Shown piece after piece: positions 604 to 24,118 of a DNA stretch of 64,000 nt; the stretch's first letter is position 1; every line of letters starts with the position of its first letter. The DNA lies in IMG/VR virus record IMGVR_UViG_3300009537_002640, positions 62,001 to 126,000 of that record; one strand, given 5' to 3'. Both the position numbers and the translations under genes were made by a program. Under the pieces are notes generated by a model. It had not been told where the DNA came from, ran no database searches, and saw only the letters and a list, made by a program, of their open reading frames with translations.

Positions 604-1434
604 TTAATATTTTCTTAGCTTCTCTATGATGGGCTGTTCACTTACATACACAGTCTTAATCCCATCACCCAATATAGTCTCAACCTCACGAGCATCACGG
701 CACAACTTACGTAAACCGGTTGGCTCCAATGATGCTGCCTGGTCACTACCATACATTGTACGGTCTAAAGTAATGTGTCGTTCAACTACGGCTGCACCTA
801 GAGATACAGCGAGCAAAGTTGGTAATAGTCCCTTTTCATGCCCGCTGAAGCCGACGCCCTTTGAATCTGGGTATCTTTCGGTGAGAGTCTTAACAACACG
901 AATATTAGACTCCCTGATGTCGGTTGGGTATGTAGAAGTGCAATGCATAACTGTAAAAGGACACTTGTGCTTCCTAAATATTTCTACTGCATGGTCAACC
1001 TGTTCTAGGGTACTCATACCCGTAGATATATAGGTGTGCTTTCCTTCTTGAGCTACAGTCTCTAATAGCTCATCGTATGTCAAGAGCGCTGAAGCAATCT
1101 TATTAAACTCTAGGTCATACTGCTGTAAGAACTTCTGGCTTTCTAAATCCCAGGCGGATGCGCTCCATGCTATACCTTTCTCTTTACAGTATCTATCTAT
1201 CTCGTCGTATTCTTCTTTGCCAAACTCTAAGCCTTCTTTCTGCTGCCTGTTGATTGTTCCCCAAGGCGATTCGCGAGACTTATCTAGCTCTTCCTTTGTA
1301 TACACTAAATCAATAGTGCGCTTTTGAAACTTAACAGCATCACATCCTGCATCTACTGCCAGGTCGATTAGCTTCTTGGCAATTCCCAAGTCACCATTGT
1401 GATTAATGCCTATCTCGGCTATAATATAAACCAT
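604..1434 (-). CDS. neuB: N-acetylneuraminate/nonulosonate synthase (NeuB family), short form without AFP-like domain
   Basis: IIAEIGINHNGD, DAVKFQKR, KIASA, ISTGM, MHCTSTYP, GFSGHE, VERHITLDR..GSDQAASLEP. Confidence 0.93.
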   Translation of the reverse strand: MVYIIAEIGINHNGDLGIAKKLIDLAVDAGCDAVKFQKRTIDLVYTKEELDKSRESPWGTINRQQKEGLEFGKEEYDEIDRYCKEKGIAWSASAWDLESQKFLQQYDLEFNKIASALLTYDELLETVAQEGKHTYISTGMSTLEQVDHAVEIFRKHKCPFTVMHCTSTYPTDIRESNIRVVKTLTERYPDSKGVGFSGHEKGLLPTLLAVSLGAAVVERHITLDRTMYGSDQAASLEPTGLRKLCRDAREVETILGDGIKTVYVSEQPIIEKLRKY

Positions 1435-1438
1435 AACT

Positions 1439-2320
1439 TTACCCCTTATTACAAACTAAAAAGATTGTATCGTGTTTTCTAATGGTTTTAAGAAATGCGG
1501 AATACGCCGCGTTCATAAAACTCAAGCTCTTAAATTTACCTGGCTTACCTCTTAGCAGCCAATACAAATGATTATCGAATGAATATCTCTGTAACCTTAT
1601 TTCTTTCTCTACTAAAAACCTCTCATTGTTTAGTAATTTGGTCAGCGATTTTGGTGTGAAGTATGAACAATGGGCGTTCTGAAAATAGAAGCTCTTGTAC
1701 TTCTCTAGCCCCACCAAGGCGTCATTGAGATTTGGAACCTCCACTATCAGACGACCATTATGACCTAACACATCATAAATATGATGCAAGAAAGGGGCTG
1801 GCTCAGGAATATGCTCTAATACATGAAAGAGGGTTACTGTATCTACCTCTTCCTTCCAATCAGAAATATTGCATAGCCTAACGTCCAGTCCTCTTTCTTG
1901 TGCGCTTCTAACTCGTGCCTCGCTAATATCTACGCCTATAGCTCCATCAATCAAACCAACAAAGTTAGAATAACCAGTGCCAACATCTAAAAGCTTGAGG
2001 TTTGGGTGTACATATTTATTCACAAGCTTTGCTCTTCTTTTATCATCTCTGGAGATTTTGGCTTGGTATTTTACGCCTGTTTCACCAGCAATAGAGGTAA
2101 CAAACTTCTTTTGCTGGTCATTATCATAAAATCTTTTGTACTCCTCATCAGTCATGACGGGGTTCAAATACACCAAATCACACTGAATACATTGCTCTAC
2201 AAGCGGGGATGGAAATGTTCCAAGGTCCTGATATTCACGAACATACATGTGTCCTCGTCTACCAAACGAATGCGTAACATCAGACTTGCATATAGGACAA
2301 TCTCTTTCTATAACTTCCAT
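1439..2320 (-). CDS. Class I SAM-dependent methyltransferase with N-terminal CxxC..CxxC
   Basis: CPIC..CIQC, LLDVGTGYS, TLFHVLEHIPEP, LIVEVPN; this form is typical of glycan-cluster methyltransferases. Confidence 0.85.
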   Translation of the reverse strand: MEVIERDCPICKSDVTHSFGRRGHMYVREYQDLGTFPSPLVEQCIQCDLVYLNPVMTDEEYKRFYDNDQQKKFVTSIAGETGVKYQAKISRDDKRRAKLVNKYVHPNLKLLDVGTGYSNFVGLIDGAIGVDISEARVRSAQERGLDVRLCNISDWKEEVDTVTLFHVLEHIPEPAPFLHHIYDVLGHNGRLIVEVPNLNDALVGLEKYKSFYFQNAHCSYFTPKSLTKLLNNERFLVEKEIRLQRYSFDNHLYWLLRGKPGKFKSLSFMNAAYSAFLKTIRKHDTIFLVCNKG

Positions 2321-3480
2321 TATAGTTCCGCTATCACTTGATCTATAAATGTATCCTTGATTATCTCTAGCTGAGTTTTCTTGGCATCCATATTTGATTT
2401 GTAGGTTGCCAGATTATTTACAACTTCATCAATTGTATTTCTTAGGTCGGCTATATCTCCCTCGGTATCCTTATTTAGTGGGATAATCAAATTACCAAGG
2501 TCTACATCTTCTAGAAACCACTTTACCTTATTATGTTCGCCTATACCAATGGGCGGAGTGTTTTGCCCAAAAGCAATAATATTAGCATGTCCTCGCATAC
2601 CTATCACCAAGTCCATTTGATTATATATGTCTACGAACAGTCCTGCCTTGTAATCAAAGGGTGGATATAGCTCCTCAGCCATACAATCAGATACTACATA
2701 GCCATCGCTACCTAAAACGCTAGTAAATAAATCCCTCATATCTTCTTTGTCGAGCTTATTAGATTCATTGGGCATTAGGTGTTCAATCAAATACACATAA
2801 GCATTATGTTCCTGTGCTTTTTCTTTTAGCACATTGAGAGTGGTATCCAGTTTGGTCTTCGCCAAATTACTATCATTGCTCAAATCAAATCTTTGGTTCC
2901 ACCTATCTGTTGCCCAATTGAACCCTATCTTGAGCCTGTTATTATCTAAACAGCTATGAGTATAGGGATAAGCCTCCGCAAATACCGCTGCATCAGGCAC
3001 TACGGTTACATTGGTCATATCAACACCGAAGGATTCCATGGTTTCATAAGTGCCCATATTGCGCACAGAAAATGCTACGGAGTTGTTCACTACTTCTTTT
3101 ACACTATCCCACATAGACTGCGGGAAGCCCACTTGGTCATGCGGAAATTCATTATAGCCTATTCCATATACGGCTATAGGCACTGTGATACTAGCTATAT
3201 TCTCTGTGTCAATGTTGAATTGCCAACCAGAGTGACTGTTGTCTTGTGGGCGATGAAAAATAAAACCGCCGCCGCCCAGCAATAACATATCGGCCTCTGC
3301 ATTCAACTTAGCAATTATTTGAGGAGAAAAGTAAGTGTTCTGATTATCCACATATACAAAACGCAACTCTGTCCCAGCTGGTGCTCGGTCACGCATTATT
3401 TTAGTGGTGGCTATCTGTAAAGCTCTGTCGCCATAGTTGTTTGACCAGCCGCCTACATGCCATATTGTCTTAACTGTCAT
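2320..3480 (-). CDS. Polysaccharide pyruvyl transferase family protein
   Basis: NNYGD, LLLGGGG, YGIGY, FSVRN, VVPDAA, VIGMRGHANIIA. Confidence 0.85.
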   Translation of the reverse strand: MTVKTIWHVGGWSNNYGDRALQIATTKIMRDRAPAGTELRFVYVDNQNTYFSPQIIAKLNAEADMLLLGGGGFIFHRPQDNSHSGWQFNIDTENIASITVPIAVYGIGYNEFPHDQVGFPQSMWDSVKEVVNNSVAFSVRNMGTYETMESFGVDMTNVTVVPDAAVFAEAYPYTHSCLDNNRLKIGFNWATDRWNQRFDLSNDSNLAKTKLDTTLNVLKEKAQEHNAYVYLIEHLMPNESNKLDKEDMRDLFTSVLGSDGYVVSDCMAEELYPPFDYKAGLFVDIYNQMDLVIGMRGHANIIAFGQNTPPIGIGEHNKVKWFLEDVDLGNLIIPLNKDTEGDIADLRNTIDEVVNNLATYKSNMDAKKTQLEIIKDTFIDQVIAEL

Positions 3481-4156
3481 GAATTAAAGCCTCCGCCATT
3501 GTCCAGTCTGCAGAATCATTAATGTCTACAGAAAAGTTTTTACCCATCCTGTAAGCATATACCTTTCCTTGATGAAAGCTGTTTGTCTTCTTCAAATGTT
3601 CTGCAGTAGAAACAAAAATAGAACCATTTACTACAAATAATGGTTTCTTTATATCCTGTCTTTGTACCTCAAAATTATCAACCCTAACAATAGTTTGCAT
3701 GACGCCCTCTTCATCTATCCATCGTAAACTACTGATTGGCTTATCAAACCTAGACACACTGATAACAGAATCACAGTCCTTCCTGTCTAAAAGCGTAAAA
3801 GCTGCATCAATATCTAGGTTGGTTCTCAGTGGAGATGTAGCCAATAGCATAGCTACACTCCCTATTATTATACCCTGTTCTTCGTAAAAGTTTAAGCACT
3901 CCAATACAGCGTGGACTGCATGAACATCATCTTGGGCATTCTCTTGAGAGCGCCAATGAATCTCTGCGCCATATTGCTTTGCCACTTCGGCAATCTCAGC
4001 ATCCTCTGTAGACACCACAACCCTATCAACTGTGCGCGCCGTGAGAGCAGACTGAATACTATATGCCACCAAGGGCTTCCCTGCCAACTCTTTAATGTTC
4101 TTTCGCTCGATGGCCTTAGAACCACCACGAGCAGGTATTACACACATGTTTATCAT
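3470..4156 (-). CDS. neuA: Acylneuraminate cytidylyltransferase (CMP-nonulosonate synthetase)
   Basis: VIPARGGSKAIERKNI, VVVSTED, LLATSPLR, NGSIF, SVDINDSADW. Confidence 0.92.
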   Translation of the reverse strand: MINMCVIPARGGSKAIERKNIKELAGKPLVAYSIQSALTARTVDRVVVSTEDAEIAEVAKQYGAEIHWRSQENAQDDVHAVHAVLECLNFYEEQGIIIGSVAMLLATSPLRTNLDIDAAFTLLDRKDCDSVISVSRFDKPISSLRWIDEEGVMQTIVRVDNFEVQRQDIKKPLFVVNGSIFVSTAEHLKKTNSFHQGKVYAYRMGKNFSVDINDSADWTMAEALIHDS

Positions 4157-4569
4157 GCATCTTTGTCCTCTGGCCCTACTGAGCCTGGCCCTCTCCTAGG
4201 ACTCTCGTAATCTTTCAAGAAGTCTCTAAGGTCTTTCGCACTGCTACCGTCCTCTCTAAGCCTGAAGCCCCTATCATCCACATATATATCTCCTAATATT
4301 TTGCCCAAGTGTAGCTCGTGAAACTTAACTCCCCAGCCCTCTAGTTGTGATTTAGTAAGACAGTACCAATCCTTGTAGGCTAAAGCTCTATTACCATTGT
4401 GCTTACCCATACCTCGTGCTGTGTGAAATATTATGTAATGCCCCGCATCGTACATTTCATTTATCACTGCTATCATGTCTTCATAAGGATATGCATCCTC
4501 ATAATGTCCGTTTGTGTTATTGCAAATAGTTCCGTCGATGTCGAACACTAAACGCCACTTTTGATTCAT
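4153..4569 (-). CDS. Small HAD-family phosphatase (capsule-biosynthesis EcbF-like)
   Basis: FDIDGTIC (motif I), HTARG (II), GK (III), DIYVDD (IV). Confidence 0.85.
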   Translation of the reverse strand: MNQKWRLVFDIDGTICNNTNGHYEDAYPYEDMIAVINEMYDAGHYIIFHTARGMGKHNGNRALAYKDWYCLTKSQLEGWGVKFHELHLGKILGDIYVDDRGFRLREDGSSAKDLRDFLKDYESPRRGPGSVGPEDKDA

Positions 4570-5324
4570 TATCTACTCCTCATAAAATCATCGATATCTA
4601 AACCGATAGCTTTCTTTATCAAACCATGACTAAAATCATAGACCACTATTCCTGCATCAGTAAACTTGGTGTTAATCATTTTGTCTATATACTCTGCACT
4701 TTCTTGAAAAAACTTTGTTGTCTTATATTCTTTACCCTCGTGTGTAATTGTTATGACTGGGCTTCTATTTGCCAGCTTAGTCGTACTTTTGCGATAATGG
4801 CTATCTGGATAATAATGATCAAACTCATCCTTGAACATTAAGTCCGCACCTATGAGATATATTTTCTTTGAACCTATCATTGCGGCAAAATGCATAGCGT
4901 TTAGTGTTACCGTTCCTACCGATAAACCCTTGTGTCCTCTCGGGCCTATAAGAAACCCCTCGTGTTCTTTATGTTTGTATTTACGAATATTAGGCAGCCC
5001 ATCGAAATAAGAACGAGTCGCAGGAACAGCATTAATGTCCTTGGGGAATTTGTTCAAACTTTTGTTATTCAGTATACGAGGCAGGTCTTTTCTATAGGGC
5101 TCTTTCTTCATAGACTCATAGGATTTAATAGGATTCTTCTCCAGTATCATATGATAATCTAACTGCTCTTCGAAATCCTTGGTGGAAAAGTTCAATCCCA
5201 CAATAACATCAAACTTACCCCGCAACTGGTCTTTATACGGAACTAGGGTTTTAGTTGAATGACCCGTACCTATTATAAGCACAGAACTACCAGGGTGTTT
5301 GTTTTCAAAATCACTTGGTGTCAT
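4569..5324 (-). CDS. DUF115/Maf-like (GT-A variant) putative nonulosonate transferase
   Basis: VLIIGTGHS, IVGLN, TVTLNAMHFAAMIGSKKIYLIGADL..HYY; this pattern is seen in DUF115/Maf and CstII-like folds. Confidence 0.65.
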   Translation of the reverse strand: MTPSDFENKHPGSSVLIIGTGHSTKTLVPYKDQLRGKFDVIVGLNFSTKDFEEQLDYHMILEKNPIKSYESMKKEPYRKDLPRILNNKSLNKFPKDINAVPATRSYFDGLPNIRKYKHKEHEGFLIGPRGHKGLSVGTVTLNAMHFAAMIGSKKIYLIGADLMFKDEFDHYYPDSHYRKSTTKLANRSPVITITHEGKEYKTTKFFQESAEYIDKMINTKFTDAGIVVYDFSHGLIKKAIGLDIDDFMRSR

Positions 5325-6445
5325 ATTTGTGAAATCCTATTTTGTATTCGTTTATGAGCCTGTCCATCAAATGTTATACCCATCTTGTCTAACAAGGCTT
5401 TCTGTTTCTCTGGCTCATGATATCTTCCATATCTCAGACAATCCCTTAGCTTCTGGTCAAGGTCTTTTAAATCAGTTATCTCTACTGCCGCACCTGACTT
5501 CACAGTATCGTAGGGGTCGTATCCGTGCTGGCTATTCTCTTTGGTGCGCACAACAAACAAAGGCTTGCCCATAGCACATGCCTCTATCTCTACTGTCGAA
5601 CAACCATTCACTACAAAGATGTCAGCAAAGTAATAATCCAGCACATGATTTTGTCTTGGCCCGATATAACTCACTCTGGTCTTCTCGTATGTCTTTCTGT
5701 ACTTGTCTCGTAGTTCTGGTAGTCCGTGCTTTTTGAAATAGCCCATTAGCTTTTCTTTTTCCTGCCTAGGTTTCACATATAACAAAAACCTTTCGCTATG
5801 TGCCAACCTACTTAATTCAACAGTGGTCTTAAAATAATCTTCGTTGTGATTTACGAAATCTATTCTATCCTTGCAGCAGAATCCGAAGAAGGCAACAACC
5901 TTTGCTTCTGGATTTTCTTTGTATGCTGTGGGGAAATCTACTGGTAATCTTTCTTTCCTATTATGCTCTACGCCATTGTAAAGTATGTCTAGTTGGGGCA
6001 AAGCATTCAGTAGTATCTTATCCTCGCCAACTTTAGCCACATGAGTTATCCAATCTGTAAATACATCATCCCAGGCACCACAATAAAGGTCGCAGCCCTT
6101 CCACACTTCGGTCCTAAACGCTGCTGGCTTAATCAAACCCTTCACATGATTTCCTACTAACCCATGACTAACGTAGACCTTCTTACAACCAGCAGGCAGT
6201 CTAACTCCCTCTGCACATGGCAAGGATGCCTGAACATACACATCTGGCTGAAACTCATCCACACACTGTTGTAGCTCTTTGCTATTGGCATAATACTTTA
6301 GTGTATCGATTCCAAAGTTATCAGCATCTCCGGGCTCTGGTTTTCCTGGCAACACCATGCGCTGTTTCATTTCCAAGCTCATGGGAAATGCCTGAAAAGC
6401 CCTCTTGTGTGCTGGGGATGTTGCTACATACAGTACTCGTTTCAT
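5321..6445 (-). CDS. GT-B fold protein, CDP-glycerol glycerophosphotransferase/sialyltransferase-like
   Basis: YVSHG, ALPQLD, YVKPR, ADIFVVNGCSTVEIEACAMGKPLF, FDGQAHKRI. Confidence 0.65.
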   Translation of the reverse strand: MKRVLYVATSPAHKRAFQAFPMSLEMKQRMVLPGKPEPGDADNFGIDTLKYYANSKELQQCVDEFQPDVYVQASLPCAEGVRLPAGCKKVYVSHGLVGNHVKGLIKPAAFRTEVWKGCDLYCGAWDDVFTDWITHVAKVGEDKILLNALPQLDILYNGVEHNRKERLPVDFPTAYKENPEAKVVAFFGFCCKDRIDFVNHNEDYFKTTVELSRLAHSERFLLYVKPRQEKEKLMGYFKKHGLPELRDKYRKTYEKTRVSYIGPRQNHVLDYYFADIFVVNGCSTVEIEACAMGKPLFVVRTKENSQHGYDPYDTVKSGAAVEITDLKDLDQKLRDCLRYGRYHEPEKQKALLDKMGITFDGQAHKRIQNRISQI

Positions 6446-7515
6446 AGTTCGTTTTTAATCGCCTCACAGATTCTCTTGCACGCTTGATCGTCTACCTTGT
6501 AAAAGTACTTCTCTATAAGCCAATCCATGCTGCCTAATGCCAGATTGCCACTCAAGAGTTTGTGCAAATCATTAGCATCATAAGCAGTAGGCATTTCATT
6601 TTTAAACTCTGGAAGTCCCTGCAATTCTTGAGATTTTCCAAACAAAACAAAGATAGATGGCTTCTTGAGAACGGCGGCTTCTAGCATCATAGTGCTAGCG
6701 AAACCTACTACTATATCCGAAAAAATTAGCAGTTCTTTAGATTCCCGCCCAGAATTCCTTATATCTCCAATGACCTTTAAATAACTCTTAGGCTTCTTGT
6801 AATGGCTTTCCAACAGCCCAGAAACTTCTTTCCCGCTACCTATTTTCTTCCTATAGCACTTAAAGGACATTGGGTGAATCTTAATGACCACCTGATAATC
6901 TCTATTGTGCCTAGCAAACTCTTCTAGAGCCCGTATAGTTTCCTCTCGCTCTGGAAATAGGTCTATCTTAATATCTACGCCATTCTCCTTCATGTAACAA
7001 TATGGTGGGTATGACGGAAAGAAAATAGTCTTCTTGTTAGGGTCTAATCCGAACTTCTTTGCTATGGCCTCTCTACTTGCCCAATTCTTCCTATCTACAT
7101 AATAATCCCATCGAGGGTAGCCAGTAATTACTGTTTTTGTTTTGTCCTTCCATAGTTCAGCATATGCAGGGCTTGGAGCTAATACCACATCTGGCGTGAA
7201 ATAGTACTCGTTATTGAAGAAGAATTTTTCCTGAGAGAACATAGCTTCCTTTAGAATATCTGTTTTCAGAGGCTCTCTTGGCATCAGAAAAACCTTAAGC
7301 CCCTTGTCTCTTAGGTACTGAAGTGTTTTCCTAATAGGAATCTCCCAGACCTCGGAGGCTATGACAAACTCATAATCAGGCTTTACCCCTTGTCTTGGAA
7401 TATGAAATGCATCTGGATGTAAGTCTATACGTAAACCAAACTTTTCAGGGCTCCAGAGTGACGAAGACTGAAAATCTATCTGCCAGGTTCTGGGGTCTAA
7501 GAATAATCCCTTCAT
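6442..7515 (-). CDS. GT-B fold surface-carbohydrate transferase (sialyltransferase/TagF-like)
   Basis: ITGYPRWD, IKIHP, SDIVVGFASTMMLEAAVLKKP, DDQACKRI. Confidence 0.7.
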   Translation of the reverse strand: MKGLFLDPRTWQIDFQSSSLWSPEKFGLRIDLHPDAFHIPRQGVKPDYEFVIASEVWEIPIRKTLQYLRDKGLKVFLMPREPLKTDILKEAMFSQEKFFFNNEYYFTPDVVLAPSPAYAELWKDKTKTVITGYPRWDYYVDRKNWASREAIAKKFGLDPNKKTIFFPSYPPYCYMKENGVDIKIDLFPEREETIRALEEFARHNRDYQVVIKIHPMSFKCYRKKIGSGKEVSGLLESHYKKPKSYLKVIGDIRNSGRESKELLIFSDIVVGFASTMMLEAAVLKKPSIFVLFGKSQELQGLPEFKNEMPTAYDANDLHKLLSGNLALGSMDWLIEKYFYKVDDQACKRICEAIKNEL

Positions 7516-8342
7516 ACAAATGAACCTTCTCCCTCTGGATAAAACTTCACCAGTGGCACATATTCTTTCATAAAGGCTATTTCTGCCTCGTTGTATTTCT
7601 TAGTATAGGTGCGAGTAGTTGTATTAAATATAGTGGCGTCAGTCTCCTGTATGCCATCAAAACTTACAGTCACCACCAACTGCCCATCAAACTCTGGATG
7701 CTTCTCCACAAACTCATTCACTATCTGCCTTAGCTTCATAGCCTTTTGAATGGGGGTCTTTTCGTCAAACTGATGGCCAACCTTATCGGTGATATCCTTA
7801 GCTGGAGAGCCACCATACACATGATTAGGCTCCATATCCTTTGTGATAACTGAGCCCACTAATGCCATACTCTTCTCACCAATCTTAACAGGAGAAACTA
7901 TACAGTGTCCAACAAGCCAGGCGTCTTTACCTATATACATAGGCTTACGGGAATGCCATCTGGGATTAAGCCCCTCAACTAAATCTCCGAACTGAGCGTG
8001 AGTCCATATTTGACTATGGGCACCTATACCTACGCCGTCATCTATTGTTAAGCCCCCAAGAGAATCTAGCACTGTATTCCCGCCAATCCAACAACACCTG
8101 CCTATCTTCATTGGCAAGGAGCCATGAGCAAATGCAAATGCATGAAGTTTAGAATAGTCTCCGAGCCTAAACTCAGGTACTATAATTCTAGATTCTCTGC
8201 CTATATAGCAGAAATCACCAAGCACAACTTTCTCAGCAGGGCCACCTTTGCCCGTGATTACTACGCCTTCCTCTATAACTACTCCGCGCCCTATCTGTAT
8301 GTCCTTGGCATTTATTTTGCCACGGATATCACTCTCAATCAT
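7512..8342 (-). CDS. Hexapeptide-repeat (left-handed beta-helix) acyltransferase
   Basis: Repeated IG...I hexapeptides, QIWTH, KIGEKSMALVGSVITKD, YGGSPAK. Confidence 0.85.
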   Translation of the reverse strand: MIESDIRGKINAKDIQIGRGVVIEEGVVITGKGGPAEKVVLGDFCYIGRESRIIVPEFRLGDYSKLHAFAFAHGSLPMKIGRCCWIGGNTVLDSLGGLTIDDGVGIGAHSQIWTHAQFGDLVEGLNPRWHSRKPMYIGKDAWLVGHCIVSPVKIGEKSMALVGSVITKDMEPNHVYGGSPAKDITDKVGHQFDEKTPIQKAMKLRQIVNEFVEKHPEFDGQLVVTVSFDGIQETDATIFNTTTRTYTKKYNEAEIAFMKEYVPLVKFYPEGEGSFV

Positions 8343-9637
8343 GTCTTATCTCCAGACATCTCCTTTTTGAAAATGGTCACTGAGCGCTCACCTTCTAGAT
8401 ATTTATCTATAGCGTCTTCTTTTACAGCCTGACCAACAAACTTAAGACTCTCTTTCATAGCATTGATTGTTTGAGTAATGTGTTCTGGTTTATGAGCCCA
8501 AATCACATTTACATTTGTACCCATGAGAATGCCTCGCTTAACCATTTCTTGATGAAACAAATCCTTAACGCCGCCTGGGTCATCAGTCTCGAACTTAGCT
8601 ACTAATCTTGGTCCGATGCCTACCATATGGGCATTGATACCATTCTGCTTGCATAGTTGATTAAATGCCTCTCTAATTGCTGCGCCTTGAGTCCAAAGAT
8701 AAGGATAGATATCATTCTTACCTTCCTTTAGTTCCTTAACAGTCTCTATAGCAGCAGCTATAGAGCAAGCCTCGCCACCAAATGTTGAGGAGAAGAAAAC
8801 ATGGTCTAGCTCTTGCATATACTTCCTCTTGCCCGCAAGAACTGAGATTGGCATCCCATTAGATATCGCCTTACCAAACGTAGCCATATCTGGAACAACC
8901 CCATAGTATTCTTGTGCGCCACCTAATGCCAGCCTAAAACCAGTTATCATTTCATCGAATATTAGAATAGTTTCATACCTGTCACACAGCTCTCTTACGC
9001 CCTCTAAGAATCCTGGCTTAGGAGGGTCTAGAGCAACTGGCTCCATAATAACTGCTGCAAACTTTCCAGTCTTAAGCTTCTCTTCCAAACTGTCCAGATT
9101 GTTATATTCAAATCGTTCTACCAGAGACTTTAGACACTTTGGTAGCCCGTAATCTCTTGGGGTAGCTGCAGCAAAGAAATCTGCCCAACCATGATAATGG
9201 CCTTCTGGACTCAATATATGCTCCTTGCCAGTATGTGCTCTGGCAACACGGACAGCAATAGAAGTCACATCAGAACCATTCTTGCCATACCTAACCTGCT
9301 CAGCACATGGAATTACATCATATAGAAGTTCAGCAAGCTCTACCTCTACAGGGTGCATTAGGGAAAATACGCTGCCTTTCCTAATTTGCTGTTCCACTGC
9401 CTTAACTGTTCTTTTATGCGAGTATCCCAAGATAACAGCACCGAGGCCACATGGATAATCTATATACCAGTTGCCATCTACATCCTTTACCTTACAGCCT
9501 TCACCGCGCTCTAAATAGATTGGATGAACCCCGAAGACATATTGGTCGGGAGCCTTACTCATTGTTTGCGTACCACGAGGCATCAATTCAACTCCTCGCT
9601 TCCACAGTTCTAATGACTTAGTAATTTTTCTTGACAT
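8339..9637 (-). CDS. Class III PLP aminotransferase (glutamate-1-semialdehyde aminomutase-like, glycan-cluster type)
   Basis: DVDGNWYID, ILGY, KNGSD, HYHGW, IFDEMITGFR, PDMATFGKAISNGMP, STFGG. Confidence 0.9.
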   Translation of the reverse strand: MSRKITKSLELWKRGVELMPRGTQTMSKAPDQYVFGVHPIYLERGEGCKVKDVDGNWYIDYPCGLGAVILGYSHKRTVKAVEQQIRKGSVFSLMHPVEVELAELLYDVIPCAEQVRYGKNGSDVTSIAVRVARAHTGKEHILSPEGHYHGWADFFAAATPRDYGLPKCLKSLVERFEYNNLDSLEEKLKTGKFAAVIMEPVALDPPKPGFLEGVRELCDRYETILIFDEMITGFRLALGGAQEYYGVVPDMATFGKAISNGMPISVLAGKRKYMQELDHVFFSSTFGGEACSIAAAIETVKELKEGKNDIYPYLWTQGAAIREAFNQLCKQNGINAHMVGIGPRLVAKFETDDPGGVKDLFHQEMVKRGILMGTNVNVIWAHKPEHITQTINAMKESLKFVGQAVKEDAIDKYLEGERSVTIFKKEMSGDKT

Positions 9638-9649
9638 GTTAAACTCCTC

Positions 9650-10210
9650 TTATTGCCATTCCTGCAATTTGTAAAAACGGTGGGCTGCTAGATAATCCCC
9701 CTCTAAAAAATACTCTTGTGGGATAACGCAATACTCTTTGAACCCATTTCTATCTAGCACTTTAATAGAGCCTATGTTGCCTTCTACCACACCCGCTTCA
9801 ATCTTATTCATGTTGAGTCTATTGAAGCAATAATCTGAGAGAAGACTCACTACCTCGGTAGCTATACCTGCACCCCAGTAGTTTTCTTCCCCTATCATGT
9901 ATCCAACTTCTGCTCGTCTAGAAATCCAATCAATGCTATTTATAGATGTTGTCCCTATATAGTTGAGATACTCGTTGTCTTGAACTAGTGCATCCTTAAC
10001 TTTATCATAGGACAAATTGGACATCATTGCGAACCTCATTTCCCTTTGTCCATCTGGAATTGTTATTTCCTCTCTACACAAAGGTATGCGACCGGCGAAC
10101 ATATATCTATTAACCCTATGGTCATTAAGCCAATCTATGTATTTAGCAGTCACGTGACGGTCTGTGAATTTTACCAGTCTAACCTTGCTGCCCTTCAAGT
10201 ATTCCATCAC
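9650..10210 (-). CDS. GNAT N-acetyltransferase (PseH/RimL-like)
   Basis: YIDWLND, AEVGYMIGE..YWGAGIATE, LNMNKIEAGV..NIGSIKVLDRNGF. Confidence 0.85.
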   Translation of the reverse strand: MMEYLKGSKVRLVKFTDRHVTAKYIDWLNDHRVNRYMFAGRIPLCREEITIPDGQREMRFAMMSNLSYDKVKDALVQDNEYLNYIGTTSINSIDWISRRAEVGYMIGEENYWGAGIATEVVSLLSDYCFNRLNMNKIEAGVVEGNIGSIKVLDRNGFKEYCVIPQEYFLEGDYLAAHRFYKLQEWQ

Positions 10211-10458
10211 ATCACCCGCGTGTATTTTATTTCATCCGTATCTTGCCTAAACTCTACAGCGAACTTCTTAATCCTTCGCATATCACTTCCGCGAACCTCG
10301 GTGCGCTTAAATACACCTTGTTTAATAACCTCTCTCCAGCTCACATAAACAACAGTCCACTCTTTGCCAGAGTTTCTAGAGGTGCCATCTTCAGCATACA
10401 ACTTGGCTTCCTTTGTTAATACAGCTTCATATAGCTTTACTATAGCTGGGTCTATCAT
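10207..10458 (-). CDS. Hypothetical protein
   Basis: 83-aa ORF with 4-nt start/stop overlaps on both sides. Confidence 0.6.
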   Translation of the reverse strand: MIDPAIVKLYEAVLTKEAKLYAEDGTSRNSGKEWTVVYVSWREVIKQGVFKRTEVRGSDMRRIKKFAVEFRQDTDEIKYTRVM

Positions 10459-10877
10459 TGTTTACCTCCCAATTGATCCATAGCTCGTGCAACAAGTTCA
10501 CTGGAACTCTGTGCCTTTTCACCACCTAGATTCCATACGAGCTTTATGTCTAGTTCTTCACACAAAGCAACCTCGGGAGTATTTTCATTCTTCCTGTCGC
10601 CACCATTCCCAAAATACATCACACCGGCCCTATGTTCCCTTAGAGCCTCACACACCGTATCGTCGCTGTCGTCAACTGGAACTACATACTCTACGTTTTC
10701 AAGATTCAATAATATCTCGCAGCGTTCTTCCCATGGCATAAACACGTAGCCCTTCTTTCTCTTGAGCCAGGCGTCACTATTGAGGATGATAAGAACTTTG
10801 TCCACTTTAGCAGCATCGTTTATCATCCTCAGGTGCCCAATATGCAACGGGTCAAAACCACCAGACAAAGCTATCAT
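10455..10877 (-). CDS. HxGH cytidylyltransferase (TagD/glycerol-3-phosphate cytidylyltransferase-like)
   Basis: SGGFDPLHIGHL, LNSDAWL.RKKG, FGNGGDR, SSS. Confidence 0.88.
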   Translation of the reverse strand: MIALSGGFDPLHIGHLRMINDAAKVDKVLIILNSDAWLKRKKGYVFMPWEERCEILLNLENVEYVVPVDDSDDTVCEALREHRAGVMYFGNGGDRKNENTPEVALCEELDIKLVWNLGGEKAQSSSELVARAMDQLGGKQ

Positions 10878-11587
10878 ACCATTGCATCCTTTATAGCCTT
10901 ATTTAAGTCTCCGTGCTTATCATACTCTCTTGTTAAAGCTACCAACATATCGTAATCTTCTTTAGTATCGAATGAAAAATCTTTGATTTTCTGACTGATT
11001 TGACTATTAGGCCGATTATTTAGAAATGGATAAATATCATACTTGGTGCCTACCCTGTACATATATGGGCTAACGTGCTCTCTCATCTGTTGGTCTTTGG
11101 CATATTTCCATGTTTCAGCCAACATCCAATAAGGAAATATTTCTACATCAGTTCCGTCTGGATATGGATTAGGAGATATCAACCCATTGTTTCCCATAAA
11201 GCCATTGTATCCTCTACTAAGATATTCAATCAACATTTCGTCTATGATATATCCTTGAATGAGAGGACAGTCTGCCGTAACCCTAACTATTAGGTTAATT
11301 CCCACTCTTCTGGCTGCTTGGAAATATCTATCCACTAAATCGTCAGAATCTCCAAAATAAACACTAAACCGGCCGTCCACAACTTCAGTAAACTCACCCT
11401 TGCTGTCTCGCTCTAAAAACTCTTGTTTATCATACTCTGGCATAGCAAGCACAATCCTCTGTGGTACTGCTGCACTCTTAACACCTTCCAAGACTCGCTG
11501 TAATGTATATTTGCCATTGATATCCTGATATGTCTTTCTAGGAAATCTATTAGAACCTGTGCGTGCCTGAATTATAACTCCAATCAT
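10874..11587 (-). CDS. SpsF/PseF-like CMP-sugar cytidylyltransferase
   Basis: IIQARTGSNRFPRK, DLVDRY, IVRVTADCPL, YPDGTDVE, REHVSPY, FDTKEDY. Start moved to ATG 11587, which follows a GGAG RBS. Confidence 0.88.
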   Translation of the reverse strand: MIGVIIQARTGSNRFPRKTYQDINGKYTLQRVLEGVKSAAVPQRIVLAMPEYDKQEFLERDSKGEFTEVVDGRFSVYFGDSDDLVDRYFQAARRVGINLIVRVTADCPLIQGYIIDEMLIEYLSRGYNGFMGNNGLISPNPYPDGTDVEIFPYWMLAETWKYAKDQQMREHVSPYMYRVGTKYDIYPFLNNRPNSQISQKIKDFSFDTKEDYDMLVALTREYDKHGDLNKAIKDAMV

Positions 11588-11675
11588 TCTACACTCCAAC
11601 TTATAAAAGCTTTCGCACCTACCCCCTAAGATATTATGGTAAGTGCCCGAATAAACACAATATTACCTGCTTAGT

Positions 11676-12527
11676 TTAACTGCTTGTTTTGACATTATTT
11701 AAATCCTCGATAATGCTACATATTCTAGCAGAACCCCTGCCATCAATATAGCTCTTAGCGAATCTACTCAAAGACTCTCTTTTGTAACTACTCTCTAACA
11801 ATTCCTCCACATGGCCCTTAAGACGCAACATATCACTCTCTATACATCCCTCTGGAAACATTTTTATGTTAGTGAGCTGATGTTCATACTGAGGAATTGC
11901 GATTGTGGGTAGCCCGAAACACATAGCTTGTATCAGAGTAAGCCCACCGTTAGTTATTCCTATCATACAGTCTTGCATGGCGTTATAGTAGTCATCCTCA
12001 GTTAAAACCTCTACGTTCTTAAAAAACATCTTGAAATTAGAATGGTTTATACTCCTAGCCACTATCACTGGCACATCCATAGATTCTAGCATTCTGACTA
12101 CTCTGTATGCCAAATTATTAGCGTCAAAGCCTCCCATGGCAACAAATGCTGTTTTAGACTTAGTGTCCAGTCTATATGTTTCGCTATAAGAGGGCTTCGG
12201 TATAGCAAAGTACTTCGCGCCCTGATACTGTGCAAGTGGATTATAAATAGCGCTAACGCTTGCGTCTACCAACTCTACATCTTCTTCGGCACCATCTATA
12301 AGCACAACCTTTACTCCCGCAGCTTTCGCCTTAAGTATCAAGTCCCTTTGGGTGTGTATATGGTCAACTACAAGAACCTTTGCTTCTGGATTACATTCCC
12401 TATTCTGAACCCAAGATGTAACATGACCTCTGGAGGATAGTTCGCGTGCAATTTCCAATAATCTGTATAAATGCCCGGTACCTATTTCACGCTTCTCTCC
12501 ATGTTCACAAAACAAAGAAACATGCAT
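11676..12527 (-). CDS. PseG/SpsG-like nucleotide-sugar hydrolase (GT-B fold)
   Basis: IGTGHLYRLLEIA, VAMGGFD, ITNGGLTL..AMCFGLP, EHQL, IDGRGSARI. Confidence 0.82.
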   Translation of the reverse strand: MHVSLFCEHGEKREIGTGHLYRLLEIARELSSRGHVTSWVQNRECNPEAKVLVVDHIHTQRDLILKAKAAGVKVVLIDGAEEDVELVDASVSAIYNPLAQYQGAKYFAIPKPSYSETYRLDTKSKTAFVAMGGFDANNLAYRVVRMLESMDVPVIVARSINHSNFKMFFKNVEVLTEDDYYNAMQDCMIGITNGGLTLIQAMCFGLPTIAIPQYEHQLTNIKMFPEGCIESDMLRLKGHVEELLESSYKRESLSRFAKSYIDGRGSARICSIIEDLNNVKTSS

Positions 12528-13351
12528 TATGAATATCTCCTATAAGGCACTGACCCTTGTTCTATATCCTGCAACCCTATCGTACCATCTCCAAGCATTG
12601 ACTCATGTTCGCGTATGGCATCTATCATGTCTCTCATCATTCTTGGGTCAGCTGATACAGCATTATCTGGAGAGCCATCATTCAAGTCAAGCGTAAAGTG
12701 CTTTTCTACAACTGTAGCTCCCATAAATACAGATAGGGATGGGACTAAAATATCATTAGTGTGGTCACTATACCCAACCTCTATCCTTCCGTGCAATAAC
12801 CTGCGTAAAGTTTTAATTGCACTCAGGTTTACCTCATGTTCTGGTGTTGGATAAGAAGAAACGCAATGCAACACGGCCAGTGAATTTACGTCTGGCAAGC
12901 ATGTGAGTGCGCTAGAAAGCTCAGCCGGGTTAGCCATTCCAGTAGACATCACTACCTTTAGTGCCGCATATCTTTTTGCACACTCGTTAATTAGAACCAA
13001 TTGAATGCGGTTTGTTAAGTCCATAGATGCTATCTTAACCCTTCTAACCCCCAGGTCTTCAACTAAGAATGCTAAAGAGTGCTCGTCAAACGGAGTGGAA
13101 AAAAATTCAATGCCAACTTTATCAGCGTGCCACTTAACATCAGCCGTTTGCTCATAGGACAGCTCGCACCTCTTTAGAATCTCGTATGCCCCTTGAGATG
13201 GATTAGACCTAAGGTCCGCCTGATAAGTTTGAAACTTAATGGCGTCTGCCCCGGCCTCTTTGGCTGCTTCGACAAGAGCCATTGCTTTTCCAACATCACC
13301 GCCATGATTTATTCCAGCTTCTGCAATTATAAACGCTTCTTTCTGATACAT
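12527..13351 (-). CDS. neuB: Nonulosonate synthase (NeuB/PseI/SpsE family), short form
   Basis: IIAEAGINHGGD, DAIKFQTY, FFSTPFD, KIAS, MSTGM, LHCVSSYP, GYSDHT, VEKHFTLD. Start set at ATG 13351 (GAGGAG RBS). Confidence 0.92.
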   Translation of the reverse strand: MYQKEAFIIAEAGINHGGDVGKAMALVEAAKEAGADAIKFQTYQADLRSNPSQGAYEILKRCELSYEQTADVKWHADKVGIEFFSTPFDEHSLAFLVEDLGVRRVKIASMDLTNRIQLVLINECAKRYAALKVVMSTGMANPAELSSALTCLPDVNSLAVLHCVSSYPTPEHEVNLSAIKTLRRLLHGRIEVGYSDHTNDILVPSLSVFMGATVVEKHFTLDLNDGSPDNAVSADPRMMRDMIDAIREHESMLGDGTIGLQDIEQGSVPYRRYS

Positions 13352-13362
13352 CTTCTCTCCTC

Positions 13363-15111: not shown

Positions 15112-15119
15112 TTATTACC

Positions 15120-15833: not shown

Positions 15834-15834
15834 A

Positions 15835-16140
15835 TCAATACTCTATATACTGAATCATATTTCCTATAAAATCTGCCAGGTTTCCCTCATCTATCTCTAT
15901 ATTTTCTTCTCTGATATTAAGCCCGCCATCTTTACTCATGAACTTAGATATAACCCTGTTGTCTCTAAGGGCCATCTTGTAAAAAGTCTTAGCTGCCCCT
16001 TTAACAGAATCATCAGAGTTGTTCAAAGTAATATTACAATTGGAAACAACCACCTTGAGATTCTTCTCTCGTATGTTATCCAGAGTCTTATCGAACTCTC
16101 CCATGTCACATGTAATATTACAATTAGTTATACTTAGCAT
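15835..16140 (-). CDS. Hypothetical protein
   Basis: 101-aa ORF filling the gap between two enzyme genes; the motif NCNIT occurs twice. Confidence 0.6.
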   Translation of the reverse strand: MLSITNCNITCDMGEFDKTLDNIREKNLKVVVSNCNITLNNSDDSVKGAAKTFYKMALRDNRVISKFMSKDGGLNIREENIEIDEGNLADFIGNMIQYIEY

Positions 16141-16141
16141 C

Positions 16142-17368: not shown

Positions 17369-17369
17369 C

Positions 17370-18314: not shown

Positions 18315-18327
18315 TATAAGCCTTTCG

Positions 18328-19774: not shown

Positions 19775-19805
19775 ATTATGACACAAATGTATAAAAATGT
19801 GTTAA
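19775..19805 (-). promoter_or_regulatory. Putative sigma70-like promoter with 10-bp direct repeats in the spacer
   Basis: Minus strand reads TTAACA-19 nt-CATAAT with a TG extended -10. The spacer region holds ACATTTTTAT ACATTTGTGT. It lies in one of the few intergenic gaps. Confidence 0.4.
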
Positions 19806-24113: not shown

Positions 24114-24118
24114 AGTTC

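What the first reader, a model, noticed from the sequence alone, without database searches (positions are those of the whole stretch)
4569..7515. Candidate new nonulosonate transferases: one Maf/DUF115-like and tandem orphan GT-B proteins
Seen: three adjacent transferase-like ORFs sit between the CMP-activation genes, and a fourth GT-B relative (19802..20893) shares the S(T/G)xxEaxxxGKp motif. Established: DUF115/Maf proteins and several GT-B families use CMP-ulosonates. Inference: these attach the CMP-sugars made here and may define unclassified, phage-encoded sialyl/pseudaminyl-transferase families.
Basis: inference. Interest (0 to 1): 0.62.

Follow-up and report, generated by a model that had tools for sequence, protein, structure and literature searches.

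The report
Phage nonulosonic-acid transferase gene cassette
Three back-to-back genes inside a giant phage's sugar-making island look like the enzymes that attach rare sialic-acid-like sugars to a target. One is a stripped-down relative of the bacterial flagellin glycosylase Maf and two have the teichoic-acid-polymerase fold, so they are good candidates for a poorly known enzyme class, but no activity is shown.

Summary
The three ORFs are real, co-directional genes with overlapping stops and starts. They lie in a roughly 40 kb glycosylation island of a contractile-tailed jumbo phage (206 kb IMG/VR record).

- **P0001 (4569-5324):** a 251 aa "Maf core". Its AF2 model (pLDDT 95.5) matches the central domain of Maf 5MU5 at Z 16.8, ahead of CstII and MptE at Z 11.
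- **P0003 (6442-7515):** passes Pfam Glyphos_transf and hits the NCBIfam family of the Tannerella Pse/Leg transferases (E 2.8e-16, below cut-off).
- **P0002 (5321-6445):** has no Pfam family. Its model is a GT-B fold that ties between TagF (Z 25) and UDP-GlcNAc 2-epimerases (Z 23-24). Profile searches put it nearer TarL. The epimerase acid triad is not conserved, while a TagF-type His (H94) is invariant.
- **P0004 (19802-20893):** a sequence orphan, GT-B by predicted structure only.

The order P0003-P0002-P0001, followed by phosphatase, CMP-synthetase and NeuB, recurs on at least six viral contigs. The island has three NeuB genes, a Pse pathway, about nine GT2/GT4 genes and almost no membrane proteins, and it abuts the tail-fibre genes.

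CMP-nonulosonate transfer is the best reading. Donor and acceptor are inferred, and CDP-polyol phosphotransfer by P0002 is not excluded.

The parts
4569..5324 (-). P0001, 251 aa: minimal Maf/DUF115-like (sialyltransferase-like fold) candidate CMP-nonulosonate transferase
   Evidence: Pfam MptE-like E 4.4e-4, below cut-off. AF2 model pLDDT 95.5. Foldseek top hit is Maf 5MU5 at E 7e-7. VIA Z 16.8 over 208 residues of Maf 262-513; CstII Z 11.2; MptE HPPK Z 11.0. Invariant G21, S23, N45, D161, H170, Y177, R178.
5321..6445 (-). P0002, 374 aa: TagF-like GT-B protein without a Pfam family; candidate transferase using a CMP- or CDP-linked donor
   Evidence: No Pfam hit. AF2 model pLDDT 93.9. VIA: TagF Z 24.8-25.2, epimerases Z 22-24, TarL 21.8. 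Broadened profile against PDB: TarL E 1.9e-11, MnaA 2.4e-7, WecB 2.5e-5. H94, G95, Q151, D153, K225, R227, T284, E286, E288 and K294 are invariant or nearly so.
6442..7515 (-). P0003, 357 aa: TagF-fold GT-B protein, distant homologue of the Tannerella Pse/Leg transferase family
   Evidence: Pfam Glyphos_transf 32 bits, above the 22.1 cut-off. NCBIfam BFO_1060_trans E 2.8e-16 at 59.6 bits (cut-off 200); TarB and TarF weaker. Atlas model TM 0.74-0.79 to Glyphos_transf clusters. Invariant R80-E81, GYPR 132-135, K212, H214-P215, S274, E279, K285-P286.
19802..20893 (-). P0004, 363 aa: sequence-orphan GT-B protein of the same island
   Evidence: No Pfam, NCBIfam or PHROG hit for it or for 57 relatives. 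Atlas model pTM 0.84, TM 0.74-0.76 to a Glyphos_transf cluster, then LpxB and GT4. 86 homologues, Uroviricota where labelled.
3470..4156 (-). PseF-like CMP-nonulosonate synthetase
   Evidence: CTP_transf_3 E 2e-22. TIGR03584 PseF E 2.9e-43, below cut-off.
4153..4569 (-). Small HAD phosphatase (capsule-biosynthesis type), candidate nonulosonate-9-P phosphatase
   Evidence: TIGR01689 EcbF-BcbF E 1.2e-9. Conserved directly downstream of the P0001 homologue in L002, L004 and L005.
604..3480 (-). NeuB_a (604-1434), methyltransferase (1439-2320) and polysaccharide pyruvyl transferase (2320-3480): the conserved tail of the cassette
   Evidence: Pfam NeuB 4e-70, Methyltransf_23 8e-16, PS_pyruv_trans 4e-21. 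Same order in L004 and L005.
7512..10210 (-). Hexapeptide acetyltransferase, class-III aminotransferase and GNAT: sugar-tailoring genes upstream of the cassette
   Evidence: The aminotransferase precedes P0003 homologues in L003, L004, L005, L010 and L011.
10455..10877 (-). TagD/RfaE-domain-II-like small nucleotidyltransferase (possible CDP-polyol or NDP-heptose maker)
   Evidence: CTP_transf_like E 1.7e-10. rfaE_dom_II 6e-13, g3p_cytidyltrns 4.7e-8, all below cut-off. Conserved in L003, L004 and L005.
10874..13414 (-). KdsB-like cytidylyltransferase (10874-11599), PseG-like hydrolase (11676-12527) and NeuB_b (12527-13414)
13363..19715 (-). GlmS-like, SDR, PseC-like aminotransferase (16142-17368), unknowns, and a PseB-like dehydratase with an N-terminal MerR HTH (18567-19715)
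   Evidence: PseC E 3e-102, PseB E 5e-101.
23118..32945 (-). Row of eight GT2/GT4 glycosyltransferase genes joining the island to the tail-fibre and baseplate genes

Best explanation
The three ORFs form the transferase cassette of a phage-encoded nonulosonic-acid (NulO) glycosylation island.

**Shown**
- P0001 has the CMP-sugar-binding, sialyltransferase-like fold of the Maf central domain. It lacks Maf's N- and C-terminal domains.
- P0003 and P0002 are distantly related TagF-fold GT-B proteins.
- P0003 is homologous to the Tannerella Pse/Leg transferase family.
- The order P0003-P0002-P0001-phosphatase-CMP synthetase-(pyruvyl transferase-methyltransferase)-NeuB is conserved on several large viral contigs.

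**Inferred**
- The island makes up to three CMP-activated NulOs: one by a PseB/C/G/I-type route, and at least one by a NeuB, phosphatase and PseF-like synthetase route.
- P0003 and P0001 transfer them with release of CMP. P0003 would use the invariant HP His (H214) on the phosphate and an N-domain base, possibly E81. P0001 would use H170, which aligns with a His of Maf.
- P0002 uses its invariant H94 as base and R227 in place of the HP His. It adds either a further NulO or, less likely, a phospho-polyol.
- The acceptor is probably soluble and cytoplasmic, most plausibly a glycan built by the neighbouring GT2/GT4 enzymes on a virion protein such as the adjacent fibre proteins. The island has no flippase, polymerase, ABC exporter or polyprenyl-phosphate transferase candidate.

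Confidence by gene that it is a CMP-NulO transferase: P0001 about 0.65, P0003 about 0.55, P0002 about 0.4, P0004 about 0.3.
For: **Fold**
- P0001 against Maf: Z 16.8, rmsd 3.4 over 208 residues, well above CstII at 11.2 and MptE at 11.0. Foldseek E 7e-7.
- Motifs shared with Maf in the HMM alignment: IIGTGxS / IVGSGPS and GxDL...H...YR.
- The Maf central domain is the catalytic, CstII-like part (PMC11339370).

**Family**
- P0003: Glyphos_transf over threshold and BFO_1060_trans at E 2.8e-16 across residues 62-323, stronger than TarB (3e-8) or TarF (3e-7).
- BFO_1060 is the strain 92A2 orthologue of Tanf_01245, whose deletion removes the terminal Pse from the O-glycan (PMC5420450).
- P0002 relates to P0003 by BLASTP at E 6e-5 and by hhalign at E 1.6e-3, with collinear motifs.

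**Context**
- Three NeuB genes and one MptE-like gene in the record.
- PseB, PseC, PseG-like, PseF-like and KdsB-like genes.
- Synteny of the cassette in the window, L003, L004, L005, L010 and L011 at 32-62% identity.
- Uniform GC across the window.
- Only 2 of 76 island ORFs have a hydrophobic segment.
- GT2/GT4 row, then fibre, baseplate J and sheath genes.

**Not an epimerase**
- The WecB D95, E117 and E131 equivalents in P0002 are S/D, M/L and T/variable. H94-G95 is 60/60 conserved.
Against: - No biochemical datum exists for any of these proteins or their close relatives. All public copies are 'hypothetical protein'.
- P0001 scores below the Pfam cut-off (20.5 against 34.6).
- P0003 is far below the BFO_1060 family cut-off (59.6 against 200), and the D/E-D/E-G motif reported for that family is not seen in it.
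- The Tannerella enzymes themselves have only genetic evidence.
- P0002's nearest solved structures and sequences are CDP-polyol phosphotransferases (TagF, Cps3D, TarL). It keeps their His, and a TagD-like gene is conserved nearby.
- No solved GT-B sialyl- or Kdo-transferase is among the 50 best of an exhaustive structural search, where the lowest listed Z is 15.2.
- The equivalence of H94 with TagF H444 and TarL H300 rests on offsets in the alignments, not on a residue-level superposition.
- The virion acceptor is pure inference from gene order and the lack of membrane proteins. Host export machinery could serve instead.
Confidence: 0.5

Rival explanations
1. P0002, and possibly P0003 and P0004, are teichoic-acid-type phosphotransferases. 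They would use a CDP-polyol made by the TagD-like enzyme at 10455-10877 and add glycerol- or ribitol-phosphate to the glycan. Only P0001 would transfer NulO.
For: - P0002 model: TagF Z 24.8-25.2, Cps3D 23.4, TarL 21.8.
- Profile against TarL: E 1.9e-11.
- Invariant H94-G95 at the position expected for TagF H444 and TarL H300.
- P0003 passes the Glyphos_transf threshold.
- The TagD-like gene is conserved in the window, L003, L004 and L005.
Against: - The TagD-like protein scores better against RfaE domain II (6e-13) than against the glycerol-3-P cytidylyltransferase model (4.7e-8), and is below both cut-offs.
- P0003 matches the NulO-transferase family BFO_1060 much better than TarB, TarF or TarL.
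- P0002 replaces the HP His by Arg.
- The cassette is welded to NeuB, phosphatase and CMP-synthetase genes in every locus, and in L002 no TagD-like gene was seen within 15 kb.
- Three NeuB genes against only one Maf-like gene would leave too few NulO transferases.
Confidence: 0.25
2. P0002 is not a transferase. It is a pathway enzyme of the Epimerase_2 type (NeuC-, LegG- or PseG-like NDP-sugar 2-epimerase or hydrolase) that supplies the hexosamine substrate for NeuB_a.
For: - Foldseek ranks UDP-GlcNAc 2-epimerases first, at E 1e-12.
- VIA Z 22-24, within about 1-2 of TagF.
- The broadened profile hits MnaA at 2.4e-7 and WecB at 2.5e-5.
- The NeuB_a branch has no other obvious source of its sugar substrate.
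Against: - No Epimerase_2 Pfam hit for P0002; the best among 60 relatives is 0.07.
- In the HMM alignment, WecB D95, E117 and E131 fall on S/D, M/L and T/variable columns.
- TarL is four to six orders of magnitude better in E-value.
- NeuC structures score lower, at Z 19.8.
- P0002 is duplicated in tandem in L011 and has a paralogue at C1:56331-57494, which is more typical of transferases.
Confidence: 0.08
3. P0001 is not a glycosyltransferase. It would be a pyrophosphokinase-type or regulatory member of the MptE/SteA fold group.
For: The Pfam family that it grazes is named after MptE. MptE HPPK scores Z 11.0 and SteA Z 10.8.
Against: - Maf scores much higher, at Z 16.8 over 208 residues, and sialyltransferases fill the rest of the list.
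- The gene context has no folate or thiamine genes but three NeuB genes.
- Adjacency to the CMP-synthetase is conserved.
Confidence: 0.05
4. The chemistry is as in the best explanation, but the acceptor is the host envelope (LPS, capsule or S-layer glycan remodelling during infection, for superinfection exclusion or camouflage) rather than the virion.
For: Phage-encoded O-antigen-modifying GTs are common. One GT2 in the island hits a GtrB-like PHROG. TagF-like and BFO_1060-like enzymes normally act on lipid-linked glycans.
Against: There is no flippase, polymerase, exporter or initiating transferase in about 60 kb. The island directly abuts the fibre and baseplate genes. Neither point is decisive, because host machinery could be used.
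Confidence: 0.3

Closest known systems
Maf (motility accessory factor) flagellin nonulosonate transferases, e.g. Magnetospirillum magneticum Maf, PDB 5MU5; Pfam PF01973
   Same: The central CstII-like domain is shared: Z 16.8, 208 aligned residues. The N-terminal GxGxS motif and a GxDL...H...YR block are shared. The gene lies next to NulO synthesis genes.
   Different: P0001 is 251 aa against about 630-670 aa and lacks both flanking Maf domains. It is encoded by a phage with no flagellin nearby. It scores below the Pfam threshold. The acceptor is unknown.
CstII / Cst-I (CAZy GT42) and GT29 sialyltransferases
   Same: Same GT-A-variant fold (Z 9-11). These enzymes use CMP-sugar donors.
   Different: No sequence-level match. 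Clearly more distant than Maf.
Tannerella forsythia Tanf_01245 / TFUB4_00887 / BFO_1060 Pse- and Leg-derivative transferases (NCBIfam NF046086)
   Same: P0003 is a significant homologue (E 2.8e-16 over about 260 residues). It is TagB-like GT-B, has the HP motif and is encoded beside NulO synthesis genes.
   Different: The score is far below the family cut-off. P0003 is 357 aa against about 445 aa. No D/E-D/E-G motif was found. The origin is viral.
TagF / TarL / Cps3D CDP-polyol phosphotransferases (Pfam PF04464)
   Same: They are the best structural and sequence neighbours of P0002. The shared motif architecture is HG, PxxD, K-x-(H/R), S-T-x-E...KP. P0003 passes the Pfam threshold.
   Different: In P0002 the HP His is replaced by Arg. 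P0003 has no obvious N-domain His (PRE instead). Both are single-domain proteins without the membrane-targeting or polymerase extensions, in a NulO context.
UDP-GlcNAc 2-epimerases WecB/MnaA and hydrolysing NeuC (Pfam PF02350)
   Same: Fold similarity to P0002 almost equals that of TagF. There is a weak but significant profile match after broadening.
   Different: The catalytic D95/E117/E131 equivalents are not conserved. No Pfam hit.

Membership tests
Maf / DUF115 (Pfam PF01973 MptE-like) | Score over the Pfam gathering threshold | tested here: not met
   P0001 scores 20.5 bits against a cut-off of 34.6 and 18.9 bits in the six-frame search. Of its 31 homologues, 9 carry a precomputed PF01973 hit.
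Maf / DUF115 (Pfam PF01973 MptE-like) | Central sialyltransferase-like catalytic domain | tested here: met
   VIA Z 16.8, rmsd 3.4, 208 residues aligned to 5MU5 262-513. Foldseek E 7e-7.
Maf / DUF115 (Pfam PF01973 MptE-like) | Three-domain architecture with N-terminal Rossmann-like and C-terminal helical domains | tested here: not met
   P0001 is 251 aa and the whole model aligns to the central domain only. Architecture as described in PMC11339370.
Maf / DUF115 (Pfam PF01973 MptE-like) | Transfers CMP-Pse, CMP-Leg or CMP-Neu to Ser/Thr of flagellin | not testable with these tools
   No flagellin gene was seen among the window ORFs that were scanned. Donor and acceptor need an assay.
TagF-like CDP-polyol phosphotransferases (Pfam PF04464) | Score over the Pfam gathering threshold | tested here: inconclusive
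   P0003 is met, at 32.0 bits against 22.1. P0002 has no hit, and the best among 60 relatives is E 0.0033. P0004 and 57 relatives have no hit.
TagF-like CDP-polyol phosphotransferases (Pfam PF04464) | GT-B fold closest to TagF/TarL | tested here: met
   P0002: TagF Z 24.8-25.2, though epimerases reach Z 22-24. P0003 and P0004: Atlas models at TM 0.74-0.79 to Glyphos_transf clusters.
TagF-like CDP-polyol phosphotransferases (Pfam PF04464) | N-domain catalytic His (TagF H444, TarL H300) and C-domain HP His | tested here: inconclusive
   P0002: H94-G95 is 60/60 conserved and lies within 3 residues of the expected position by alignment offsets, while the HP His is replaced by R227. P0003: H214-P215 is invariant, and the N-domain has R80-E81 where I expected the His; that placement is by eye, not by alignment.
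TagF-like CDP-polyol phosphotransferases (Pfam PF04464) | Uses CDP-glycerol or CDP-ribitol | not testable with these tools
   Only a TagD-like gene nearby.
BFO_1060 family glycosyltransferase (NCBIfam NF046086; Tannerella Pse/Leg transferases) | Score over the curated cut-off (200 bits) | tested here: not met
   P0003 scores 59.6 bits at E 2.8e-16. P0002 scores 15.1 bits at E 0.0097.
BFO_1060 family glycosyltransferase (NCBIfam NF046086; Tannerella Pse/Leg transferases) | HP and D/E-D/E-G motifs of bacterial sialyltransferases (PMC5420450) | tested here: inconclusive
   HP is present and invariant in the P0003 family. No D/E-D/E-G tripeptide appears in P0003 on reading. Motifs as defined.
UDP-GlcNAc 2-epimerase / NeuC (Pfam PF02350) | Pfam threshold and the conserved acid residues D95, E117, E131 (E. 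coli WecB numbering, from my knowledge of the family) | tested here: not met
   No Pfam hit for P0002. In the HMM alignment to 1F6D these residues fall on S/D, M/L and T/variable columns.
GT-B sialyl- and Kdo-transferases (CAZy GT38, GT52, GT80, GT99, GT107) | Closest structural or sequence neighbours belong to these families | tested here: not met
   None is among the 50 best of 48,161 representative chains for P0002, where the lowest listed Z is 15.2. No Pfam hit to their models. Only 3 of 57 distant relatives graze A-2_8-polyST, at 2e-4. P0004's feature search lists one polyST-bearing cluster.

The most novel reading that the evidence does not exclude
A clade of very large, uncultured contractile-tailed phages carries a self-contained cytoplasmic glycosylation factory: three NulO synthases, several nucleotidyltransferases and at least 16 transferases. 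It would decorate the phage's own fibre or virion proteins with NulO-capped glycans. The capping enzymes would be a domain-minimal Maf plus virus-restricted TagF-fold families (P0002, P0004) that have switched from CDP-polyol phosphotransfer to CMP-nonulosonate glycosyl transfer, with Arg replacing the HP His. These would merit new CAZy families.
Probability: 0.25. Interest if true: 0.8.

Novelty: new variant of a known kind. Interest (0 to 1): 0.55.

Why it matters
[quoted passage not shown] The Tannerella paper states that knowledge of them is scarce, and only one Maf structure exists.

This cassette offers three compact, soluble, high-confidence-fold candidates. The 251 aa Maf core and two roughly 360 aa TagF-fold proteins sit next to their presumed donor pathways and could be expressed and assayed directly.

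If the assays confirm activity:
- The minimal catalytic unit of Maf would be defined.
- TagF-fold enzymes would be shown to have been recruited repeatedly for CMP-sugar transfer.
- New tools for NulO glyco-engineering would be available.
- Huge phages would be shown to glycosylate themselves or their hosts with sialic-acid-like sugars. I found no paper on this in the library searched.

Tried and rejected
**Searches that found nothing**
- PHROGs: no hit for any of the four proteins.
- GenBank phages: megablast of 8 kb, and tblastn of P0001 and P0002, gave no match.
- IMG/VR pattern scan with P0003: none. With the P0002 alignment: only two contigs.
- GTDB species genomes, pattern scans with the P0003 and P0002 alignments: none. 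The method sees only fairly close relatives, so this is weak evidence of viral restriction.
- Single-sequence and small-profile PDB searches for P0001, P0003 and P0004 gave nothing significant.
- hhalign of the P0004 family against the P0002 and P0003 families: no signal.
- The look-up of sequencing runs: none was listed.
- No terminase was found in the 206 kb record.

**Not obtained**
No statement about binding is made.

**Rejected readings**
It is the generic GT-B helix.
- P0002 is not an epimerase, because the catalytic triad is absent.
- The island is not a recent insertion, because GC is uniform.

Full report
**Where this is.** The window is bases 62001-126000 of a single 206,495-base IMG/VR virus record. 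Every substantial ORF is on the minus strand and GC is a uniform 0.40-0.43 over the sugar island. The window also encodes a baseplate-J protein (42509-45736), a tail-sheath-like protein (61482-63938) and fibre-sized proteins of 940-2185 aa. The record is therefore a contractile-tailed phage. CheckV rates it 25% complete, and relatives of the genes studied here lie on contigs of 289-481 kb, so it belongs among the very large phages.

**The observation.** ORFs 4569-5324 (P0001, 251 aa), 5321-6445 (P0002, 374 aa) and 6442-7515 (P0003, 357 aa) exist as described. They are joined by 4-base overlaps to each other and to the flanking genes. ORF 19802-20893 (P0004, 363 aa) also exists.

They are genuine genes:
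- The word-indexed search found 31, 67 and 85 homologues for P0001, P0002 and P0004, down to about 35% identity. All are from metagenomes and all are unnamed or 'hypothetical'.
- The exhaustive profile search for the P0002 family found 62 clusters (50% identity level) at E<=1e-30 and 374 at E<=1e-3.

The quoted motif is only loosely right. P0002 and P0003 need one more residue before the Glu, P0003 has KKP and P0004 has GKH. The motif is the ordinary nucleotide-binding helix of GT-B C-domains, visible also in the TarL and WecB alignments.

**P0001.**
- Pfam gives only a sub-threshold MptE-like/DUF115 hit (E 4.4e-4, 20.5 bits against 34.6).
- With a 32-sequence alignment, AlphaFold2 gave a model of pLDDT 95.5 and pTM 0.93.
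- Foldseek puts Maf of Magnetospirillum (5MU5) first at E 7e-7. ST8SiaIII, CstII, ST6GalNAc2 and archaeal MptE follow.
- VIA-align gives Maf Z 16.8 (208 residues, rmsd 3.4, Maf residues 262-513). CstII scores 11.2, MptE 11.0 and Cst-I 10.9.
- The whole of P0001 corresponds to the central, CstII-like domain of Maf. The N-terminal Rossmann-like and C-terminal helical domains described for Maf (PMC11339370) are absent.
- The family profile aligns its IIGTGxS and GxDL...DH...YR blocks with IVGSGPS and GVDL...HH...YR of Maf (not significant on its own). G21, S23, N45, D161, H170, Y177 and R178 are invariant in the family.
- Resemblance of these blocks to the CstII CMP-binding motifs is from my memory of the CstII sequence and was not tested.
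- DUF115-like proteins already occur in viral proteomes, in uncultured Caudovirales and ChoanoV1. The kind is not new for viruses, though none is characterised.

**P0003.**
- It passes Pfam Glyphos_transf (32 bits against 22.1; residues 109-351).
- In NCBIfam it hits BFO_1060_trans at E 2.8e-16 (59.6 bits, residues 62-323, cut-off 200), well ahead of TarB, TarF and TarL.
- BFO_1060 is the strain 92A2 orthologue of Tanf_01245 and TFUB4_00887. These are TagB-like proteins whose deletion removes the terminal Pse or Leg derivative from the Tannerella O-glycan (PMC5420450).
- The Atlas's own model of P0003 (pTM 0.78) matches Glyphos_transf clusters at TM 0.74-0.79.
- Five family members share invariant R80-E81, GYPR (132-135), K212, H214-P215 (the 'HP' motif), S274, E279 and K285-P286. 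The D/E-D/E-G motif reported for the Tannerella enzymes is not present.

**P0002.**
- No Pfam family matches it or, convincingly, any of 60 relatives.
- It is weakly similar to P0003: BLASTP E 6e-5, and hhalign E 1.6e-3 over 211 columns. The motifs are collinear: PQxD/YPRxD, KPR/KxHP, ST.E.EA...KP/ST..LEA...KP and a C-terminal DG...R block.
- Its model (pLDDT 93.9) is a GT-B fold. Foldseek ranks UDP-GlcNAc 2-epimerases first.
- VIA-align ranks TagF first (Z 25.2), with epimerases at 22-24. The search of 48,161 representatives that does not depend on Foldseek gives TagF 24.8, Cps3D 23.4, epimerases 22.8-21.6, TarL 21.8 and NeuC 19.8. No GT38/52/80/99/107 enzyme is in the top 50.
- The Atlas shape search returns Glyphos_transf clusters first.
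- Distant relatives from the big search carry overlapping Glyphos_transf (38/57), Epimerase_2 (34/57) and Capsule_synth (24/57) hits. The family therefore sits in the unresolved middle of that clan.
- A second-iteration profile (A6) hits TarL at E 1.9e-11, MnaA at 2.4e-7 and WecB at 2.5e-5.
- In those alignments the WecB catalytic acids D95, E117 and E131 (numbering from my knowledge of the family) fall on columns that are S/D, M/L and T/variable in the P0002 family. WecB H213 and the TarL 'KMHP' His both fall on R227, which is R in 59/60.
- H94-G95 is conserved 60/60, and 56/59 in the broadened set. By alignment offsets it lies within three residues of TagF H444 and TarL H300. This is an inference, not a superposition.
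- P0002 thus fails the epimerase test and looks like a TagF-type transferase with an Arg for His swap at the phosphate-binding site.

**P0004.**
- It has no family hit in any library, nor do 57 relatives. It has no PDB hit and no profile similarity to P0002 or P0003.
- The Atlas's own model (pTM 0.84) is GT-B, with TM 0.74-0.76 to a Glyphos_transf cluster, then LpxB and GT4. Its language-model neighbours are viral clusters, a Leptospira O-antigen family and one polysialyltransferase-bearing cluster.
- 'GT-B relative' is thus supported at fold level only.

**Context.** The record has three NeuB genes: window 604-1434 and 12527-13414, and C1:59857-60564. All are short and lack the C-terminal domain of the NeuB_NnaB model. 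The window also holds:
- PseB-like (with an N-terminal MerR HTH), PseC-like and PseG-like genes;
- PseF-like and KdsB-like cytidylyltransferases;
- a small HAD phosphatase and a GlmS-like gene;
- a class-III aminotransferase, acetyltransferases, a methyltransferase and a pyruvyl transferase;
- a TagD/RfaE-II-like nucleotidyltransferase.

Just outside the window the same record has paralogues of P0003 (C1:58126-59208) and P0002 (C1:56331-57494), another weak TagF/epimerase-like GT-B (C1:54176-55279), a GT2 and two methyltransferases. Window 23118-32945 holds eight GT2/GT4 genes that run into the fibre genes.

Of 76 minus-strand ORFs of at least 80 aa between C1:38 and 100 kb, only two have even one hydrophobic 19-mer. 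I saw no flippase, polymerase, exporter or polyprenyl-phosphate transferase candidate.

**Synteny.** A phmmer comparison of the window's genes with six loci from other contigs shows one recurring order: aminotransferase ... P0003 - P0002 - (sometimes a second P0002 or a P0004-like GT-B) - P0001 - HAD - PseF-like synthetase - pyruvyl transferase - methyltransferase - NeuB. The loci were L003 from a 468 kb contig, L004 from 311 kb, L005, L010 and L002 from one 102 kb contig, and L011 from 158 kb. The full order is seen in L004 and L005, and parts of it in the others. The three genes of the finding are therefore a conserved unit, tied to a NeuB, phosphatase and CMP-synthetase branch.

**Interpretation.** The best-supported reading is a transferase cassette for CMP-activated nonulosonates. 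The evidence differs in kind for each gene:
- P0001: fold plus context.
- P0003: homology to a genetically validated family, plus context.
- P0002: fold, kinship to P0003, and context.

Donor identity is not shown for any of them. For P0002 the teichoic-acid-type alternative stays open. It would use a CDP-polyol made by the TagD-like enzyme, with the His acting as base on a phosphodiester-forming reaction. I give it about 0.25.

The acceptor is inferred. The lack of membrane machinery and the position next to fibre genes favour a soluble, probably virion, protein or its glycan. Host-envelope remodelling using host export is a fair rival.

**Comparison and novelty.**
- P0001 works like a Maf catalytic domain but fails two Maf membership features: the Pfam threshold and the three-domain architecture.
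- P0003 is a Glyphos_transf member by Pfam, and a homologue but not a member of the BFO_1060 family.
- P0002 and P0004 belong to no curated family. Close relatives were found only in viral or metagenomic contigs. The scans of bacterial genomes were of limited sensitivity.
- The library held no paper on phage-encoded nonulosonate transferases or on such islands in huge phages. That is absence in this library only.

I rate the finding as a new variant of known kinds: a useful, assay-ready set of candidates rather than a new principle.

Noticed in passing
window 18567-19715 (-); also L004:1-455: The PseB-like UDP-GlcNAc 4,6-dehydratase carries an N-terminal MerR-type HTH domain (PF00376, residues 4-39). 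The same fusion is seen on a related 311 kb contig. A DNA-binding domain on a sugar dehydratase is unusual.
   Followed up: partly
window 604-1434, 12527-13414; G000:C1:59857-60564: The record has three NeuB homologues, all short (235-295 aa). The two in the window match only the first 266-277 of 329 positions of the NeuB_NnaB model (the third was not run against it), so they lack the C-terminal SAF/antifreeze-like domain. The related contig L002 also has three.
   Followed up: partly
G000:C1:54176-60564 (upstream of the window; L009:10176-16564): A second set of transferase paralogues lies outside the window: P0003-like (C1:58126-59208), P0002-like (C1:56331-57494), a further weak TagF/epimerase-like GT-B (C1:54176-55279), a GT2 and two methyltransferases.
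   Followed up: partly
window 23118-32945 (-): Eight GT2/GT4 glycosyltransferase genes in a row, one of them a 711 aa double GT2. They sit directly upstream of fibre-sized proteins (32995-35817; 35952-42509 with a Laminin_G_3 domain), baseplate J (42509-45736) and sheath (61482-63938).
   Followed up: partly
G000:C1:38000-100000: Only 2 of 76 minus-strand ORFs of at least 80 aa have a single hydrophobic 19-residue segment. The large sugar island appears to have no membrane protein at all.
   Followed up: partly
whole record G000: CheckV calls the 206 kb record 25% complete, which would imply a genome far above 500 kb. No terminase (PF03237) was found in the record. Relatives of the cassette lie on contigs of 289-481 kb, one of them binned in NCBI as a Patescibacteria MAG (246 kb contig).
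   Followed up: no
L004:2427-2729 and 20706-21107; L002:1-1013; L004:4935-6455: Related islands contain Cas12f1-like TNB (TnpB-type) ORFs and a B12-binding radical SAM enzyme next to the NeuB genes.
   Followed up: no
window 10455-10877 (-): The small nucleotidyltransferase scores better against RfaE domain II (heptose-1-P adenylyltransferase) than against TagD. What it activates is unclear, and that matters for the donor of P0002.
   Followed up: partly
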